From the NCBI RefSeq assembly GCF_001194135.2, contig NC_069008.1, forward strand, positions 7,923,742 to 7,958,683: a stretch of 34,942 bases of DNA. The letters run 5' to 3'. The notes under the pieces were generated by a model that saw nothing but the letters and a program-made list of their open reading frames with translations, was not told the DNA's origin and ran no database searches. Shown here piece after piece: positions 4,842 through 34,942 of the stretch. This DNA is from Octopus bimaculoides (lineage: Eukaryota). Position numbers and translations under genes: made by a program. Within the stretch, counting starts at the first letter, position 1. Each line of letters begins with the position of its first letter.

Positions 4842-5761
4842 TTAGGTCATCCCATAAATGCGTTTTTATCAATTGCATGGACTAAAAGTCTGAGGGGGAC
4901 AGGATAAATTACCTACATCAACATTTTATAAAAGCAAGTAGTAATTTTACCTTGTACTTATTGTTAGTGCCAGTTTTTGAAGAGTGCAATTTGATTTTAA
5001 CAGTTATTTTTTCAAAGCTGTAATGGAAGTGACAAAGGAGCATATTCGGCATATTTTGCTTTATGAGTTCAATAAAGGCAACAACATAGCAGAAAGTGCG
5101 AGGAATATTAATGCAGTAAATGGGGATCGGACAATAAGTGTAAACCAGTGTCAACGGTGGTTTCAGAAATTCTGAGCTGGAAACTACTGCCTAGAAGACG
5201 AGCCTCATCCTGGGAGACCTGTAGAGTTTGATGAGGACATCCTGTAAACCCTGCTGGAACAAAATCCCATTATAACTGTTGAAGATCTAGCAGAGAAGCT
5301 TGGATTTGGTCATTCAACCATTCATGGACACCTGTGTGCCATCGGAAAAGTCAGCAAATTAGGTCAATGGGTTCCTCACAAACTTTCTGAATCTAATGGT
5401 CAGCCACATACAGCAAGGATGACATTCCGAAGGCTGGAGCAGTTTGAATGGGAAACGATTCCCCACCAACAATAGTTGCCAGACATTGCCCCATCTGATT
5501 ATCATTTAATCTGCAGTCTCCAAAATCATTTTAACGGAAAAAATATAAATTCTGTCAGTGAGGTCAGAACAGTACTGGAGGAGTATTTTTCATCATGGAC
5601 AAGTGAATTTTGGAAGAGGGGCCTTGCAAGTCTACCAGATAGATGGAAGAGCATTGTAAAAAAATGGAGGAGAGTATATTTTAGATTAAAAAAGAACTTT
5701 ATCTTAATTTTGAAAAATAAAAGAAGTATAAAGAAACCACATTATTTATGGGATGACCCAA
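4842..5761 (+). mobile_element. Mariner (Tc1/mariner) transposon, internally deleted, 920 bp
   Basis: TIRs TTAGGTCATCCCATAAAT (4842-) and ATTTATGGGATGACCCAA (-5761), each flanked by TA; transposase remnant inside. Confidence 0.95.
5023..5689 (+). pseudogene. Mariner transposase pseudogene
   Basis: MEVTKEHIRHILLYEF...CQRWFQKF*...WVPHKL (WVPHEL motif) joined to (N)GQPHTA...PDIAPSDYHL (YSPDLAPSDY motif)...LPDRW; several stops and the catalytic core is deleted. Confidence 0.93.
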
Positions 5762-5989
5762 TACATACCTCTGATGAAATTTTCTACAAATACCTTTCGG
5801 ATAACGTAAATTATGAACTTGGATATTGGAACTTTATATGAAAAAAGTTCGGGTGGAGTGGGATAATACATGAACCTCACCAAAATGTGAGAATATAAAG
5901 TTAACATGCATAAATTATCCAAAACTACTCCCTCCAAAAACATTTTTTTTCTTCACAATTTATACTGTAGGAAATTCTACGAGAAAAAA

Positions 5990-11291: not shown

Positions 11292-11890
11292 TTACAAAAT
11301 ATATATTAGCAACAGAAGCAGTATTAATACCAAGAGGTAATATTTATCCCCACTTCTGGCAGGTATCTCTAGCAGTCAAACGTCCATCGTGAATTTTGCA
11401 CCAGAAGACAATATGAGAGTTTCTCTCTACTGCAGTATAATTTGTTCCAACAGAACATCCACATTTAAGTGAGGATAAATATTCTTTTCTACTCTAGGCA
11501 CAAGGCCCAAAATTTTGGGGGAGGGGACCAGTCGATTAGATCGACCCCAGTGCACAACTGGTACTTAATTTATCAGCCTGGAAAGGATGAAAGGCAAAGT
11601 CGATCTTGGCGGAATTTGAACTCAGAATGTATAGACAGAAGAAATACCACTAAGCATTTCACCCAGCGTGCTAATGTTTCTGCCAGCTCATCACCTTAGT
11701 GAGGATAAATATTATCTCTGAGTTTTAATACTGCCTCTGTCTCAAATATATATCTTTTAACAAGCTCACTGACTAATTGTGACACCAGCACCCATTCTGG
11801 CATTGTTTTTCTATACATTACTAGTGGGGAGATGAGTCACTGCTATCTCTAGCAGTCAAGCATCCATCATTGATAAGGCCAAGGCTCACA
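11292..11890 (+). mobile_element. Decayed second locus of the hammerhead-bearing repeat (retrozyme-like)
   Basis: 11391-11483 matches about 30622-30720 and 11714-11880 matches about 30390-30535; HHR core degraded to TTGATAA (11870-11876); inverted 60-bp segment at 11292-11355. Confidence 0.75.
11484..11697 (-). mobile_element. SINE family E with 16-bp TSD
   Basis: AGTGAGGATAAATATT at 11468-11483 and 11698-11713 flanks a complete reverse-complement family E copy. Confidence 0.92.
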
Positions 11891-28548: not shown

Positions 28549-29281
28549 GGTAAGTAAGTAAAATCCCTGGCTGGTGACTGGAGTGGGAGGCTGTCCTCTC
28601 AACCAATAAACTGCTGTGGGTGCCACTGGATGATGGACTCTGGTGATGATTTTATTCTTCACTTTCCAATCCATAGTGCTAGTCTTAATGTGCTTGAGGT
28701 CGAGGTGCTGAACACACCAAGTTGCAGCTGGAGGTGGTGGTGTCACAGCATGTGGCATCCAAGATGAAGGGCCAATCGATACAGAATGAGAAAATTGTCA
28801 TACTGTCAGGCCTTGGTCTAACCCTGCTGGCTCAAGCTGGGAAGAGAAGCCTGCAACGTCAAGGCCAGTGGTTCTCAACCGGGGTCCATATAACCATTAG
28901 GGGTCCCATATAAGTTAATGTTGATTATGGATGTATCTTTTTTCTTTTCTCCAAAGATGGTTAAGTATGATTTGAAGGAGATTTAGCTGTTATTTCTTGC
29001 TGGTTGAGTGATCACAGTGATGCCTGCCAGGGGTGGTGTTTAGTTCCAGGTCAACCAAACAAGCAGACTTGTAATCAATAAGACTTCCTACCATGACCAT
29101 ATCATATTACATCAGACATAATAGACAGGAGTAAATTATCCAACATGTGTCCTTCCTGTTTTTTGCTTTCTTTTTAAATTGGTAGAGTGAGATTGGAGAA
29201 GCAACAGCCAATTCTCCCTGAAATCTCATGTAAAAAGGATGGACCTTAAGTCATTAGATATTATATAATATAGTGCAAGAT

Positions 29282-29760: not shown

Positions 29761-30202
29761 TAATTCTTTTGATACCATTTTGTTTGAGACTTACTGTCCT
29801 TGGTCCAATGATACAACTTTCATATCTTAAAGTGATCTAAATTAAAACATTTCATCAAAATTCCATGTTTATTTTATATTCTAAACATCAGCTTAAAGTA
29901 GAGAGTTAGTTTACAAAATTCTTTTACTGTTATTTCTAGCAGATTAAATTACCACATACCAATTGCTATCGTCATTAGTGGTGGTGGTGGTTGTGGCTGT
30001 TGCAGTGTTGGTGGCTGTTGTGGTGTTAGTTAGTGGTTGTTGCGGCAGTGGCTGTTGTGGTGATGGTGTTGGTGGTTGTGGCGGTGGTTAGCTCGACTGG
30101 CGACAAAGAGTCAAATCTTTTTAAATGACACTCTGGAGTTGTTAGAAATAGCAGCTAAATCACTCTCAAATCATAACCTATTGTTACATATAATTATGCA
30201 TG

Positions 30203-30720
30203 TTAAACAAAATATTAGAGACCAGGGCAGATTCAATACTAAGAGGTAATATTTATTCCCACCAGATCATGTGTGTTTGACCTTTCAATCTGGTGGTCAT
30301 AACACTGGAGGTGGTTGGGGTTTATCTCTCTGTTAGCGATATAAACAAGAGTGTATTTCACACCAAAAGCCAAGCAGTTGTATAAATATTACCTCCCGGA
30401 ATTAATACTTTTGAACAAGCTCACTGGTGAATCATGACACTAGCGCTTGTTTTGGCACTGTTGCTCTATCTATCGCTGGTAGGGAGGTGAGTCGCTGCTA
30501 TTTCTAGCAGTTGAGGGTCCATCACTGATGAGACCAGGGATGGTTGAAATCCCATGATCTGGTGGTCCCAGGCTGGAGATGGAGAGGATTTATTTCCCTG
30601 CTCGCGATATAAACAAGACTGCATTTTGCATGAGAAGCCAATGTGTGAGTTTCTCTCATGGTATCTACCACAGTATAGTTTGTTCCAACAGAACTTCCAT
30701 GTTTAAGTGGAGATAAATAT
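30203..30720 (+). mobile_element. Non-coding hammerhead-bearing tandem element (non-LTR retrozyme-like) with inverted 5' segment
   Basis: Direct repeat ATCTGGTGGTC...GCGATATAAACAAGA at 30288 and 30557 (period 269 nt); full HHR at 30515-30569; no ORF; inverted segment at 30203-30270. Confidence 0.75.
30515..30569 (+). ncRNA. Type I hammerhead ribozyme, apparently intact
   Basis: GGGTCCATCA-CTGATGA-GACCA-GGGA-TGGTT-GAAA-TC-CCAT-GA-TC^-TGGTGGTCCC: all core nucleotides, stem II 5 bp with GNRA loop, closed stem III, AUC triplet (cut after 30559), stem I 6 bp + U.U + 3 bp. Confidence 0.88.
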
Positions 30721-30949
30721 GTACGCCTATTTGTATGAGCCAACAAGGGACCCTGGTGGAAACAGCAGTCAAATTACCCTCAAATCACACCCAGAAACTG
30801 TAGTTGCAGTTGTAAGATATTCAGCTGCAGTACTTCAGGTCAAATCCAATCAAGCAGATCCAAGACAATCAAGCTATGCCACTCCAGTTGAATTTTTTTA
30901 AACATCCATATACAGATAAATAAATAAAGATACAGATAAACAGATAGAC

Positions 30950-31336: not shown

Positions 31337-31491
31337 AGATTTGATTGCTATTTCTAGCATGTCGAGCAAGCAAATACAGGCTTCCTTGTCAACTGAAAAA
31401 CTGGGCTGTTCTTGCTCAACTGCTATTTTTAGCAGGTTGAGCAAGCAGATACAGGCTTCCTTGTTAACTGTTGAAGAACTGGACTGTTCTT
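31337..31491. repeat. 78-bp tandem repeat, left remnant (about 2 diverged units)
   Basis: GCTATTTCTAGCA...CAAGCAGATACAGGCTTCCTTGTTAACTG..GAAGAACTGGACTGTTCTT matches the unit at 33295-34015. Confidence 0.85.
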
Positions 31492-31538
31492 TATTTACAT
31501 TATTTACATTTGACGGATAGTTGTCCTTGTTTGTTGTT

Positions 31539-31584
31539 AACACAACGTTTCGGCTGATATACCCTCCAGCCTTCTTCAGGTGTC
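31539..31584 (-). ncRNA. Minimal type I hammerhead ribozyme in the PLE terminal repeat
   Basis: GACAC-CTGAAGA-A-GGCTG-GAGGGTATAT-CAGCC-GAAA-C-GTT^-GTGTT: intact core, 5-bp stems I and II, palindromic AACGTT stem III, GUU triplet. Confidence 0.85.
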
Positions 31585-31722
31585 TTAGGGAAATTTCAAA
31601 CCTGGATTCTCATTCCTAAGGTATTTTTTGATGTTATTATTATTATTACTATTGTTCAGGTCACCGCGCTCTTAACCACTACGCCATATGCCCGTGGGCA
31701 ATTATGGAGTGAATTTTAGGGC

Positions 31723-32262
31723 TTATAAATCTAATATTTTCCTATCCTTCCTTAATACTGGTTCCCATATGCTGCTCATATCTGTACTCTGTCTGCTTAG
31801 GAGGTTGTTGTATCCTAGCATATGTGCTGCTTATTCAGTTTTCCAGTGGTGATCTCTGTCTATTATTTTAACTTCATCCTACAGGGGGAGGTGGTCTCCA
31901 TTTTTCCATACATGATCAGCTATACTCGATTTATCAACATCGAGTGTCACAGCTTTGCGATGTTCGTCTACACTCATTTTGAGGGGGCGGCATGTTTTGC
32001 CTTTGTATAACCTACCACAGCTGCATGGGATGGAGTACACACAGTCTTTGGTCATATTCTCTTCTGTTGGTGGTTTTATTTGAAGGAGATACTTGTGAAG
32101 TGTTGTATTACTCTTGAATACTGCCCTGATGTCATATGGGCCGCATATCTTTTGTATCTTTTCGGAGAGGCCTTTCACACAGGGTAGACAGATTGTGGAC
32201 AGTTTATTGGCCTCATTCTCTCTCTTCTTCATAATTTCATAATCTTCTTCCTCTCTCTTCTT
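31723..32262 (-). pseudogene. PLE GIY-YIG endonuclease remnant (inverted arm)
   Basis: ...CVYSIPCSCGRLYKGKTCRPLKMSVDEHRK...SSIADHVWKNGDHLPL*DEVKIID...; TGG->TAG stop and a small deletion. Confidence 0.9.
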
Positions 32263-32267
32263 CAAAA

Positions 32268-33043
32268 GAAGACAATCAGCTGGCATTCCTGGACGTATTA
32301 ATAACACGTACCAAGTATGGATTCAGGACGTCCGTATACGGCAAACTGACCTTTCCTGGACGATACCTCAACTTCAATTCCCACCATCCATACAGTGTAA
32401 AGAGAGGGATTGCTCAATGCCTAAAACATCATGCAAAGAATATAAGCAGCGATCGTGATACACACCACGAAGAAATGATCAAGCTCAATAATGATCTGTT
32501 AAGCAACAACTACCCCAAAAGTATACTATCCATTCCAATTATGAAGAGAGAGGATTAGGCCAATAAACTGTCCACAGTCTGTCTACCCTGTGTGAAAGAC
32601 CTCTCCGATAAGATATGCAGCCCACATGACATCAGGACAGTATTCAAGAGTAATACAACACTTTGCAAATATCTCCTTCAAGTAAAACCACCAATAGAAG
32701 AGAATATGACCAAAGACTGCATGTACTCCATCCTATGCAGCTGTGGTAGGTTATAGAAAGGCGAAACATGCTGCCCCTCAAAATAAGGGTAGACAAACAT
32801 CGCAAAGCTGTGACACTAGATGTTGATAAATCGGGTATGGCTGATCTTGTATGGAAAAATGGAGACCACCTCCCCCTGTGGGATGAAGTTAAAATAATAG
32901 ACAGAGAACACCACTGGAAAATACGAAAACTAAAAGAAGCAGCACATATGCTAAGACACAACCTCCTAAGCAGACTGAGTGCAGATATGAGCAGCATATG
33001 GGAACTGGTATTAATGAAGGATAGAAAAATATTAGATTTATAA
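32268..33043 (+). pseudogene. PLE RT C-terminus/linker plus GIY-YIG endonuclease remnant
   Basis: EDNQLAFLDVLITRT...TSVYGKLTFPGRYLNFNSHHPYSVKRGI...; CMYSILCSCGRL*KGET...KEAAH; stops at 32556 and 32754, 1-nt frameshift at about 32775. Confidence 0.92.
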
Positions 33044-33072
33044 GCCCTAAAATTCACTCCATAATTGCTCAC

Positions 33073-33150
33073 GGGCATATGGCATAGTGGTTAAGAGCGC
33101 AGGCTACTATCACCAAGATTCTGAATGTTGATTCCAAGCAGTGACTTGAA
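33073..33150 (+). promoter_or_regulatory. tRNA-like Pol III promoter module inside the PLE 3' terminal region
   Basis: A-box TGGCATAGTGG (33080-33090), D-arm-like GGTTAAGAGCGC, degenerate B-box GTTGATTCC (33127-33135); the minus-arm copy (31653-31696) keeps the A-box but lacks the B-box. Confidence 0.6.
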
Positions 33151-33294
33151 CAATAACAATAATAATAACAACAGAAAAATACCTTAGGAATGAGAATCTA
33201 GGTTCGAAATTTCAGCCAAAACGTGTTAACAACTAACAATATCCGTCTAATGTAAATAATGTACATAATTCCTCATCTCTTAAATACAGAGCTG

Positions 33295-34015
33295 TGGACT
33301 GTTCTTGCTAAGCTGCTATTTCTAGCAGATTGAGCAAGCAGACACAAGCTTCTTTGCTAACTGATGAAGAACTGGGCTGTTCTTGCTAAGCTGCTATTTC
33401 TAGCAAGTCAAGCAAGCAGATACAGGCTTCCTTATTAACTGGTGAAGAACTGGACTGTTCTTGCTAAGCTGCTATTTCTAGCAAGTCAAGCAAGCAGATA
33501 CAGGCTTCCTTGTTAACTGGTGAAGAACTGGACTGTTCTTGCTAAGCTGCTATTTCTAGCAAGTCAAGCAAGCAGATACAGGCTTCCTTGTTAACTGTNN
33601 NNNNNNNNNNNNNNNNNNNNNNNNNNNNNNNNNNNNNNNNNNNNNNNNNNNNNNNNNNNNNNNNNNNNNNNNNNNNNNNNNNNNNNNNNNNNNNNNNNNN
33701 NNNNNNNNNNNNNNNNNNNNNNNNNNNNNNNNNNNNNNNNNNNNNNNNNNNNNNNNNNNNNNNNNNNNNNNNNNNNNNNNNNNNNNNNNNNNNNNNNNNN
33801 NNNNNNNNNCAAGCAGATACAGGCTTCCTTGTTAACTGGTGAAGAACTGGACTGTTCTTGCTAAGCTGCTATTTCTAGCAAGTCAAGCAAGCAGATACAG
33901 GCTTCCTTGTTAACTGGTGAAGAACTGGACTGTTCTTGCTAAGCTGCTATTTCTAGCAAGTCAAGCAAGCAGATACAGGCTTCCTTGTTAACTGTGAAGA
34001 ACTGGGCTGTTCTTG
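33295..34015. repeat. 78-bp tandem repeat array (contains an assembly gap)
   Basis: Unit GAAGAACTGGACTGTTCTTGCTAAGCTGCTATTTCTAGCAAGTCAAGCAAGCAGATACAGGCTTCCTTGTTAACTGGT; period 78 (33841 to 33919); stops in all six frames of the consensus. Confidence 0.95.
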
Positions 34016-34744
34016 TTAGTGTGTTAACAGTAGTAGCAACATTATCAAGTAACTGTAATAATATTAATAATAAGTGAAGTTCTGGTGGTGGTGCTGTTAA
34101 GAGTAGTAATAAAAGCACTTAAGCGATGATTTCACTGCGACAGGCAGCAAATGGTAGGAAGGCAGTGGTGGTGGTGGTGGTGTCATATTTAGAAATGGTG
34201 ATGACGGTGTCGGTGATAACAAGCTGAGTGATTAAAAAGATTACATCGCCAGTTGAAATCATGATGATGGAGAGGCATGTAGGTAGGGCGGGGAGGAGGG
34301 GGCGGGGAATGGCAGCACGGAACCATGTTGATAAACACATCTTAATATCAAGTTGGGGGAATTCTAGTTTACATATATATGTGAGTGTGTGCGTGTGTAT
34401 GCGTGAGGGTGTATACATGTACATATGTATGTATATGCATGCCAAGAGATACTAGGAATTTTGAATTTATCAACACTCATTGAAGTAAATACAAATATAA
34501 CATAACAACATAGTCACACACATACTACAATCGTAGAGATGTATATACATACACAGATGCATGTGTACATACATACTGATGCATAAAAGATATACATACA
34601 CATACATATTCTTATATGAACATGCACATGTTTCATTGTTTGTGCTGCTTCTGCAACTTGTTTATGGTTTCAAAATCTTAGCAGACAGATCTACATATCG
34701 TGCTACCAATTTGATTATATATTATCTATCCAGTCATATTTCCA

Positions 34745-34942
34745 TAGATCTATCTATCTAGTTGTATAGATCTAACTAGTCGTACTTCGATAGATCTAAG
34801 TATCTAGCCGTACTTCTACAGATCTGTTTATCTAGCCAGCCGTACTTCTACAGATCTGTTTATCTAGCCAGCCGTACTTCTACAGATCTGTTTATCTAGC
34901 CAGCCGTACTTCTACAGATCTGTTTATCTAGCCAGCCGTACT
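34745..34942. repeat. 32-bp minisatellite running to the window end
   Basis: Unit TAGCCAGCCGTACTTCTACAGATCTGTTTATC, period 32 (34811 to 34843), preceded by degenerate (TCTA)-rich units. Confidence 0.92.

What the first reader, a model, noticed from the sequence alone, without database searches (positions are those of the whole stretch)
30288..30720. Intact type I hammerhead ribozyme in a tandem non-coding unit: candidate retrozyme / circRNA-producing element
Seen: a complete HHR at 30515-30569 with every core nucleotide, a GNRA loop II, a closed stem III and an extended stem I. The sequence just after the cleavage site (ATC^TGGTGGTC...GCGATATAAACAAGA) recurs 269 nt upstream, so the HHR sits in a head-to-tail repeat with no ORF. 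Combining this locus with the 11.3-11.9 kb locus gives a full unit of roughly 330-350 nt. Established: metazoan non-LTR retrozymes and ribozyme satellites (newt satellite 2, Schistosoma Sm-alpha) are short tandem units with type I HHRs whose transcripts self-cleave to monomers and can circularise. Inference: this is a retrozyme-like family in a probable cephalopod genome, possibly mobilised by PLE machinery. I cannot tell whether it has been described.
Basis: partly seen in the sequence, partly recalled or inferred. Interest (0 to 1): 0.9.

Follow-up and report, generated by a model that had tools for sequence, protein, structure and literature searches.

The report
Decayed hammerhead retrozyme relic in octopus
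This is one surviving hammerhead-ribozyme motif inside an old, partly tandem 331-base non-coding repeat of an octopus genome, next to a Penelope-like retrotransposon: most likely a worn-out copy of a known class of ribozyme-carrying mobile elements, and not a working circular-RNA factory.

Summary
The motif is real. At 30515-30569 (+) every hammerhead core base is present, with three helices in type I topology. A descriptor scan finds it once in the window and 3 times in 3000 shuffled windows. It is weak, though. Rfam Hammerhead_1 gives 18.1 bits against a cut-off of 34. The helix II closing pair is a G-U wobble, and the hammerhead fold is 9 kcal/mol worse than a competing fold.

It sits in a reconstructed 331-nt unit that is non-coding, 44% GC and strongly self-paired (z -3.6). 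The locus holds about 1.6 head-to-tail units. A second locus at 11.3-11.9 kb has unrelated flanks, and there is a fragment at about 29.0 kb. All other hammerhead positions are decayed or deleted, so the locus fails the "two consecutive complete ribozymes" rule and cannot itself release circles.

An inverted pair of truncated Penelope-like element copies lies 0.9 kb downstream. It is inserted, with an 11-bp target duplication, into a 78-nt satellite related to the sequence just 5' of the ribozyme.

The host is an Octopus species. No further family copies could be reached, so conservation and covariation remain untested. Verdict: probable relic of a metazoan non-LTR retrozyme, a new member of a known kind, of modest interest.

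The parts
30515..30569 (+). Type I hammerhead motif. Helix I 5' strand 30515-24; CUGAUGA 30525-31; helix II 30532-45 (G10.1-U11.1 wobble, GGGA loop); GAAA 30546-49; helix III 30549-58 (3 bp, CCAU loop); predicted cleavage after C30559; helix I 3' strand 30560-69.
   Evidence: Rfam RF00163 matches 30519-30565 over the full model at 18.1 bits (cut-off 34).
30291..30559 (+). One genomic repeat unit (269 nt), running from a dead cleavage-site equivalent to the live one. It carries an internal deletion of about 62-70 nt relative to the 331-nt unit.
   Evidence: As a circle it folds with z -3.1.
30560..30720 (+). Following half unit (unit positions 1-161). The array ends at ...GATAAATAT.
   Evidence: It matches 11390-11482 at 78%.
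30263..30290 (+). Decayed 3' half of the upstream unit's ribozyme: no CUGAUGA, and GACC in place of GAAA. It is followed by a conserved ATC/TGGTGGTC.
30201..30262 (+). Left-terminal segment shared with the second locus (11292-11353). Its last ~32 nt in this locus (30231-30262; 34 nt, 11320-11353, in the second locus) are an inverted copy of unit positions 148-181.
   Evidence: z 4.0 and 11.2.
11292..11890 (+). Second locus of the family. It holds the left segment, the pre-ribozyme module, a deletion of the ribozyme plus unit positions 1-60, and then unit positions 62-331. A SINE with its target duplication is inserted at 11484-11713. The ribozyme core is decayed to TTGATAAG...CACAATC.
   Evidence: Its flanks are not homologous to those of the 30.2 kb locus.
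28975..29037 (+). Third, fragmentary copy of the pre-ribozyme module plus the 5' half of the ribozyme (GTGATGCC...CCAGGGGTGGT).
   Evidence: It aligns to unit positions 256-316 with score 21; 0 of 1000 shuffles reach that.
31346..31490 (+). Left part of a 78-nt satellite array. It shares GCTGCTATTTCTAGCA and the following bases with the pre-ribozyme module.
33295..34015 (+). Right part of the same 78-nt satellite array, in the same orientation. It contains an N gap.
31491..33294 (.). Penelope-like element insertion. An inverted 5'-truncated copy (minus strand, 31491 to about 32250) lies head-to-head with a longer 5'-truncated copy (plus strand, about 32262-33294; RT C-terminal part and endonuclease-like domain). 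A 28-nt tail is present on one end only. The 11-bp target duplication TGGACTGTTCT is at 31480-90 and 33295-305.
   Evidence: The architecture is as drawn for PLEs in PMC8557442.
31539..31584 (-). Minimal hammerhead-like core in the PLE 3' UTR, read by eye: GACAC-CUGAAGA-A-GGCUG(10 nt)CAGCC-GAAACGUU/GUGUU, with a palindromic ACGU in place of a helix III hairpin. It is deleted in the plus-strand arm. It is present in O. sinensis at L001 10937-10983.
   Evidence: Rfam is silent.

Best explanation
The region is a decayed insertion of a metazoan non-LTR retrozyme. This is a short, non-coding, tandemly integrated retroelement. Its transcript is cut once per unit by a type I hammerhead, the monomer is ligated into a highly self-paired circle, and the circle is copied back into DNA by a Penelope-like element's reverse transcriptase and endonuclease.

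Shown here:
- the hammerhead motif;
- the 331-nt unit and its partial tandem arrangement;
- a second dispersed locus and a third fragment;
- low GC content and excess self-pairing;
- a typical PLE insertion next door.

Inferred:
- The family's founder had an active ribozyme. The paralogues keep recognisable remnants, and the U at 11.1 would result from a C-to-T change at a CpG.
- Propagation went through self-cleaved or circular RNA and PLE enzymes.

Present state: a relic. Only one of the ribozyme positions is complete, and it is weakened. A transcript could at most be cut once, so no unit-length circle can arise from this locus.
For: - Motif complete and in type I topology.
- One hit in the window against 0.001 per shuffled window.
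- Full-length alignment to Rfam Hammerhead_1, with every conserved core base matched.
- The head-to-tail repeat puts the cleavage-site equivalents 269 nt apart.
- Reconstructed unit: 331 nt, 44.4% GC. As a circle its MFE is -107.9 kcal/mol against -87.5 +/- 5.6 for shuffles (z -3.6). Flank controls give z -0.6 and -0.2.
- No ORF with homologues.
- The second locus has non-homologous flanks, and there is a third fragment.
- Paralogues retain TTGATAAG and GTGATG...CCAGGGGTGGT at the core and helix II, and ATC/TGGTGGTC at the cleavage site.
- A PLE with an inverted truncated copy, a one-sided tail and a TSD lies 0.9 kb away.
- These features match published descriptions of non-LTR retrozymes: units of 150-450 bp, GC below 45%, self-paired circles, co-occurrence with PLEs (PMC7229834; 10.64898/2026.07.22.740005).
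- Type I hammerheads are annotated in another cephalopod genome (235 in the giant squid, PMC6962438).
Against: - The Rfam score is 18.1 bits, well under the cut-off of 34. The site is absent from the gathering-level search and from the 600-nt search.
- The 10.1-11.1 pair is G-U, and helix I has a U-U mismatch.
- The hammerhead fold (-16.1 kcal/mol) loses to an alternative fold (-25.0).
- No other copy has an intact core, and the GAAA half is supported only by the live copy.
- The locus does not have two consecutive complete ribozymes.
- TRF does not call the tandem repeat.
- No family copies were found in 42 kb of O. sinensis DNA.
- No predicted protein matched a translation of the unit.
- At 0.001 per 35 kb, roughly 80 chance motifs are expected in a 2.8-Gb genome.
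Confidence: 0.6

Rival explanations
1. A chance hammerhead-like motif in an old non-coding repeat that never depended on a ribozyme. The palindrome CATCA-C-TGATG supplies most of the CUGAUGA box, and the rest arose by drift.
For: - Sub-threshold Rfam score.
- Only one complete motif among four copies.
- G-U at 10.1-11.1, and an unfavourable fold energy.
- The related T-motif / PLE-tail-like elements carry the same palindrome and hairpin without a ribozyme.
- About 80 chance motifs per genome are expected at 0.001 per window.
Against: - Given about 17 expected CUGANGA boxes per window, completing the motif by chance has a probability of about 1e-4 or less per box.
- The motif sits exactly where unit periodicity places a cleavage site.
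- Paralogues differ from the core mostly by transitions.
- Unit size, GC, self-pairing and the PLE neighbour all fit retrozymes.
Confidence: 0.2
2. Not a separate non-autonomous element, but a fragment of the terminal (pseudo-LTR) region of an autonomous Penelope-like element family whose coding part is absent here.
For: - PLEs carry hammerheads in their terminal regions and insert as tandem or inverted partial copies (PMC8557442).
- The antisense of the pre-ribozyme module matches a PLE-3'UTR-like element in O. sinensis (L001 11690-11800); 0 of 1000 shuffles reach the score.
- Retrozymes and pLTRs are reported to be homologous in Xenopus (10.64898/2026.07.22.740005, section 14).
Against: - Neither locus is joined to RT or endonuclease coding sequence.
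- The 3' UTRs of the PLE copies actually present show no significant similarity to the unit.
- The hammerhead has canonical helices, not the minimal PLE form seen at 31539-31584.
- The shared module is in antisense orientation.
Confidence: 0.12
3. A host-exapted ribozyme that processes a cellular transcript.
For: A few conserved hammerheads in amniotes are thought to act in mRNA biogenesis (PMC7229834, introduction).
Against: - No gene context was found in the window.
- The motif carries decay marks.
- It lies in a repeat-rich stretch among SINEs, a satellite and a PLE.
Confidence: 0.03

Closest known systems
Metazoan non-LTR retrozymes (Acropora, Mytilus, axolotl; Cervera & de la Pena 2020, PMC7229834)
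   Same: A type I hammerhead inside a short head-to-tail non-coding repeat of a few hundred bp; GC below 45%; a strongly self-paired monomer; dispersed copies; PLEs in the same genome. Helix III of 2-3 bp with a tetraloop, as in invertebrate examples.
   Different: Only about 1.6 units, with a single complete ribozyme. The copies are old (70-78% identical). The helix II closing pair is G-U. No expression or cleavage data. Both loci start with the same left segment, which is not expected for random permutations of a circle.
Minimal hammerheads of Penelope-like elements (Cervera & de la Pena 2014; PMC8557442)
   Same: Same ribozyme class and same genomic neighbourhood. The adjacent PLE has a minimal hammerhead-like core in its 3' UTR.
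   Different: The PLE form has no helix III hairpin (a palindromic ACGU instead) and short helices. The motif studied here has three proper helices and is not attached to a PLE coding region.
Newt satellite 2 and Schistosoma Sm-alpha ribozyme repeats
   Same: Tandem units of about 330 nt, each with a type I hammerhead whose cut defines the monomer.
   Different: Those form long arrays of near-identical, transcribed, demonstrably self-cleaving units, and some work as dimers because helix III is very short. Here the array is a short degenerate remnant.
Plant LTR retrozymes (PMC4918200)
   Same: Non-autonomous, ribozyme-flanked, circRNA-based life cycle.
   Different: The plant elements use type III hammerheads inside LTRs, have a primer binding site (PBS) and a polypurine tract (PPT), are 600-1000 nt with high GC, and are mobilised by Gypsy-type elements.

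Membership tests
Hammerhead ribozyme, type I (Rfam RF00163) | Conserved core CUGANGA ... GAAA ... U-H at the junction of three helices | tested here: met
   All core positions are present at 30525-31, 30546-49 and 30558-59.
Hammerhead ribozyme, type I (Rfam RF00163) | Helices II and III closed by loops, helix I open (type I topology) | tested here: met
   Helix II is 5 bp with a GGGA loop. Helix III is 3 bp with a CCAU loop. Helix I is 6+3 bp and open.
Hammerhead ribozyme, type I (Rfam RF00163) | Base pair 10.1-11.1 closing helix II (G-C in most natural hammerheads; my own knowledge) | tested here: inconclusive
   The pair is kept only as a G30532-U30545 wobble. The U is followed by G12, so a C-to-T change at a CpG would produce it (inference).
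Hammerhead ribozyme, type I (Rfam RF00163) | Score at or above Rfam's curated gathering threshold | tested here: not met
   18.1 bits against 34. The site is not reported in the whole-window or 600-nt searches. This is an operational criterion, not a biological one.
Hammerhead ribozyme, type I (Rfam RF00163) | Mg2+-dependent self-cleavage 3' of position 17 | not testable with these tools
   The predicted site is after C30559. The hammerhead fold is 9 kcal/mol above the MFE.
Hammerhead ribozyme, type I (Rfam RF00163) | Covariation in helices across homologues | not testable with these tools
   Only three partial, decayed paralogues are available. No eukaryotic genome could be searched by nucleotide.
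Metazoan non-LTR retrozyme | Type I hammerhead within a short head-to-tail repeat (150-450 bp) | tested here: met
   The reconstructed unit is 331 nt (269 nt in the genome). There are about 1.6 units at 30263-30720.
Metazoan non-LTR retrozyme | [quoted passage not shown] | tested here: not met
   The upstream ribozyme (30263-30290) is destroyed, and there is none downstream. Hence a relic, not an active copy.
Metazoan non-LTR retrozyme | Non-coding, GC below 45%, monomer RNA highly self-paired | tested here: met
   No ORF with homologues. GC is 44.4%. Circular fold z is -3.6, against -0.6 and -0.2 for flanks.
Metazoan non-LTR retrozyme | Multiple dispersed genomic copies | tested here: inconclusive
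   Three loci lie in this window with unrelated flanks. None was found in 42 kb of O. sinensis. The genome-wide count is unobtainable here.
Metazoan non-LTR retrozyme | Expression as unit-length linear and circular RNA | not testable with these tools
   No transcript data were accessible. A search with translated frames found no predicted ORFs from assemblies.
Metazoan non-LTR retrozyme | Co-occurrence with Penelope-like elements | tested here: met
   A PLE insertion lies at 31491-33294.
Penelope-like element (the neighbour at 31491-33294) | [quoted passage not shown] | tested here: inconclusive
   The window copy keeps the RT C-terminal part and an endonuclease-like domain (VYSIPCSCGRLYKGKT...EH...H, by eye). 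Homologues at E 1e-99 extend into RVT_1, and their profile hits solved RTs at E 0.002. Pfam does not call GIY-YIG. The structure model is too poor to use, pLDDT 46.
Penelope-like element (the neighbour at 31491-33294) | Insertion architecture: inverted 5'-truncated copy, a 30-40 bp tail at one end, target duplication | tested here: met
   Inverted arms (pairs I4, I6, I8). A 28-nt tail on the plus-strand arm only. An 11-bp TSD. Matches Fig. 2 of PMC8557442.

The most novel reading that the evidence does not exclude
In octopus the retrozyme, a dispersed ~45-nt 'T' element resembling a PLE 3' UTR, and a 78-nt satellite all share one hairpin module (CUGCUA-NNNN-UAGCAG plus flanks). The PLE has inserted into that satellite. 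This could mean that a retrozyme lineage was built from the antisense of a PLE tail, later spawned a satellite, and that the module is the sequence PLE enzymes recognise or target. That would be a directly readable example of retrozyme birth from, and homing with, its helper element.
Probability: 0.12. Interest if true: 0.55.

Novelty: new member of a known kind. Interest (0 to 1): 0.3.

Why it matters
If confirmed genome-wide, it would add octopods to the animals carrying non-LTR retrozymes. It would also give a locus where a retrozyme, a derived satellite and a Penelope-like element lie side by side, which is useful for the current question of whether animal retrozymes descend from PLE termini. 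As it stands it is an ordinary decayed transposable-element copy. It does not open a new mechanism, and this particular locus is unlikely to make circular RNA.

Tried and rejected
- Rfam at gathering level on the whole window, and at E<=10 on 600 nt: no hammerhead hit. Only an 86-nt search shows the sub-threshold match.
- TRF and the repeat finder do not list the 269/331-nt tandem. blastn was needed.
- Attempts to reach more family copies all failed:
  - O. sinensis DNA fetched through a PLE protein and a mariner protein (L001, L005; 42 kb) holds no copy.
  - ENA and JGI contigs fetched the same way (L002-L004) are not octopus: they share no SINEs with the window.
  - A protein search with the concatenated open frames of the unit found nothing.
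  - A metagenome scan for module plus CUGAUGA gave 33 chance matches. The only one nhmmer picked up (L018, E 0.024) has no convincing extended homology to the unit.
  - The window's own PLE ORF is not on record.
- The 39-nt direct repeats flanking the locus (30140-78 and 30754-92) were considered as a long target duplication. I rejected this because the left copy is closer to a third copy at 28966-97 than to the right one, and the motif is dispersed.
- The left flank was considered as a long inverted partial unit. Only about 32-34 nt are significant.
- Similarity of the unit to the 3' UTRs of the PLE copies present is not significant.
- Pfam and a structure model for the GIY-YIG domain: negative or too low in confidence, so no fold search was run.
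- Bacterial promoter/terminator and tRNA scans are uninformative here.

Full report
**1. The observation**

The sequence at 30515-30569 on the plus strand reads as a type I hammerhead.
- Helix I 5' strand: GGGUCCAUCA, 30515-24.
- Core box: CUGAUGA, 30525-31.
- Helix II: GACCA/UGGUU with a GGGA loop, 30532-45.
- GAAA: 30546-49.
- Helix III: AUC/GAU with a CCAU loop, 30549-58.
- C17: 30559.
- Helix I 3' strand: UGGUGGUCCC, 30560-69. Helix I has six pairs, a U-U mismatch and three more pairs.

A descriptor scan that I wrote requires the core, contiguous helices II and III, and a helix I. It finds this site and nothing else on either strand of the window. In 3000 dinucleotide-preserving shuffles of the window it fired 3 times at the stricter setting and 31 times at the lenient one. 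It fired zero times in 380 kb of reversed real sequence.

So the motif is far from expected in one window. At 0.001 per 35 kb, however, roughly 80 such motifs would arise by chance in a 2.8-Gb genome.

**2. Weak points of the motif**

- Rfam reports no hammerhead at gathering level on the whole window, nor at E<=10 on 30200-30800.
- Only when 86 nt are searched does Hammerhead_1 appear, at 30519-30565. The match covers the full model and every conserved core base, at 18.1 bits against a cut-off of 34.
- The pair that closes helix II (10.1-11.1) is G-U instead of the usual G-C. The U is followed by G12, so a C-to-T change at a CpG would produce it (inference).
- The hammerhead secondary structure costs -16.1 kcal/mol, while the minimum-energy fold of the same 68 nt is -25.0. 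That fold keeps helix I but replaces helices II and III. Its z-score against shuffles is only -1.1.

**3. The repeat**

- blastn shows that 30264-30373 matches 30531-30641 at 71%.
- 30380-30539 matches 11722-11884 at 72%.
- 30620-30720 matches 11390-11482 at 78%.
- The string ATC/TGGTGGTC recurs 269 nt upstream of the predicted cut.
- The upstream unit lacks about 62-70 nt that are present both downstream and at the 11-kb locus.
- Joining 30560-30720 to 30390-59 gives a 331-nt unit.

The 30.2-kb locus is therefore laid out as follows:
- a shared left segment, 30201-62;
- the decayed 3' half of a ribozyme, 30263-90;
- one internally deleted unit ending in the live ribozyme, 30291-30559;
- half a unit, 30560-30720.

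The 11-kb locus has the same left segment (11292-11353). It also has the module that precedes the ribozyme, a deletion that removes the ribozyme and unit positions 1-60, the rest of a unit interrupted by a SINE with its target duplication (11484-11713), and a second ribozyme position decayed to TTGATAAG...CACAATC.

Flanks of the two loci are not similar, so these are separate insertions and not a segmental duplication.

A third fragment at 28975-29037 aligns to unit positions 256-316. None of 1000 shuffles reaches its score. It reads GTGATGCC...CCAGGGGTGGT where the live copy has CTGATGAG...CCAGGGATGGT.

Taken together, the paralogues support an ancestral NUGAUGAG box, helix II, and the cleavage-site/helix I strand. 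The GAAA half is supported only by the live copy.

With copies about 70-78% identical to each other, retention of one complete core among four positions needs no selection (my estimate).

**4. Properties of the unit**

- It is 331 nt long with 44.4% GC.
- Folded as a circle, its minimum free energy is -107.9 kcal/mol against -87.5 +/- 5.6 for shuffles (z -3.6).
- The 269-nt genomic unit gives z -3.1.
- Two flanking control stretches give z -0.6 and -0.2.
- The main helix pairs the bases just after the cut with the module just before the ribozyme.
- The longest stop-free stretches are 72-78 codons on the minus strand. A protein search with all open frames concatenated found nothing.

**5. The neighbourhood**

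From 31491 to 33294 lies a Penelope-like element insertion.
- A plus-strand copy runs from about 32262 to 33294. It encodes the C-terminal part of the reverse transcriptase (FLDVLITR...YLNFNSHHP) and an endonuclease-like domain (VYSIPCSCGRLYKGKT...EH...H).
- A shorter copy lies in inverted orientation from 31491 to about 32250.
- A composite of the two translations finds 205 proteins at E<=1e-10. The best named hit is an uncharacterised Octopus sinensis protein at 74% identity.
- Longer homologues extend into RVT_1, and their profile matches solved reverse transcriptases at the YVDD region.
- Pfam does not call GIY-YIG, and an AlphaFold model was too poor to use. The endonuclease assignment therefore rests on motif reading.

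The architecture is the one drawn for PLEs in PMC8557442: an inverted 5'-truncated copy, a tail of 28 nt on one end only, and an 11-bp target duplication, TGGACTGTTCT, at 31480-90 and 33295-305.

In the minus-strand arm, and in the O. sinensis copy (L001 10937-10983), the 3' UTR reads GACAC-CUGA(A/U)GA-A-(G/A)GCUG...CAGCC-GAAACGUU/GUGUU. By eye this is a minimal PLE-type hammerhead with a palindromic ACGU in place of a helix III hairpin and one extra A. Rfam does not see it.

**6. The satellite and the shared module**

The PLE sits inside a 78-nt satellite, at 31346-31490 and 33295-34015, in the same orientation on both sides. The satellite shares the 16-mer GCTGCTATTTCTAGCA with the sequence immediately 5' of the ribozyme. 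It aligns over 42 columns with the 11-kb copy through to the decayed core, with a score above all 500 shuffles.

The same hairpin, in the opposite orientation and with a characteristic tail (GCTAGAAATAGCAGCYAAATC...CAAATCACACC, about 45 nt), occurs at nine or more other places in the window. Two of them flank the 30.2-kb locus.

The antisense of the pre-ribozyme module, and of the 29-kb fragment, is significantly similar to a stretch of O. sinensis DNA (L001 11690-11800). That stretch itself aligns with PLE 3' UTRs.

The 3' UTRs of the PLE copies actually present are not significantly similar to the unit. I leave this link as an unexplained lead.

**7. The host**

The window's SINEs recur at 77-90% identity in two O. 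sinensis loci.

**8. Interpretation**

These features fit the non-LTR retrozymes described by Cervera and de la Pena (PMC7229834):
- type I hammerheads in head-to-tail repeats of 150-450 bp;
- GC below 45%;
- self-paired circular monomers;
- PLEs in the same genome.

A 2026 preprint (10.64898/2026.07.22.740005) reports that such elements are related to PLE termini. It uses "two consecutive units with complete hammerheads" as the mark of an active copy. This locus fails that mark.

The best reading is a relic of such an element (confidence 0.6). The rivals are:
- a chance motif in an unrelated repeat (0.2);
- a fragment of a PLE terminal region rather than a separate element (0.12);
- a host-exapted ribozyme (0.03).

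**9. Novelty**

I found no paper in the searchable library that describes retrozymes or hammerhead repeats in octopus. The giant-squid genome paper lists 235 Rfam Hammerhead_1 hits, so the ribozyme class is already known in cephalopods. This is a new member of a known kind.

**10. Limits**

No eukaryotic genome could be searched by nucleotide sequence. Copy number, consensus, covariation, expression and activity all remain untested.

Noticed in passing
window 31480-33305: A Penelope-like element inserted as a head-to-head pair of 5'-truncated copies into a 78-nt satellite. The 11-bp target duplication is TGGACTGTTCT, and a 28-nt tail is present on the plus-strand arm only.
   Followed up: yes
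window 31539-31584 (minus strand); L001 10937-10983: A minimal hammerhead-like core in the PLE 3' UTR (CUGANGA, an extra A, a 5-bp helix II, GAAACGUU/GUGUU). It is shared with an O. sinensis copy but deleted in the plus-strand arm. Rfam is silent.
   Followed up: partly
window 9449, 9552, 17718, 25946, 30143, 30757 (plus strand); 28998, 29938, 31356 (minus strand): A dispersed motif of about 45 nt with a GAAA-capped 6-bp hairpin (GCTAGAAATAGCAGC) and a tail ...CAAATCACACC. It is the antisense of the module 5' of the ribozyme, and it resembles a PLE-3'UTR-like stretch in O. sinensis (L001 11690-11800). Its origin and meaning are unexplained.
   Followed up: partly
window 29905-30178: Two copies of that motif lie in inverted orientation around a (GTG)n microsatellite at 29978-30089.
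   Followed up: no
window 11484-11713: A SINE inserted into the second retrozyme-like locus, with a 17-19 bp target duplication (TTA(A)GTGAGGATAAATATT). This shows that the host element is older than that SINE insertion.
   Followed up: partly
window 33060-33140 and 31666-31700: The PLE 3' UTR contains a stretch that looks tRNA-like by eye (GGCATAGTGGTTAAGAGCGC...GATTCC). It is partly deleted in the minus-strand arm. ARAGORN calls no tRNA.
   Followed up: partly
window 4880-5850; L004: An internally deleted mariner-type transposase pseudogene. It is 86% identical in DNA to a JGI metagenome contig (sample 3300002938) that shares none of the octopus SINEs. The mariner may therefore be shared across unrelated hosts.
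   Followed up: no
window 34724-34942: A 32-nt tandem repeat (AGCCGTACTTCTACAGATCTGTTTATCTAGCC) runs off the end of the window.
   Followed up: no
window 16.7-17.25 kb, 18.5-18.94 kb, about 27.7 kb, 33599-33809: Assembly gaps total 1268 N. One lies inside the 78-nt satellite, so the true length of that array is unknown.
   Followed up: no
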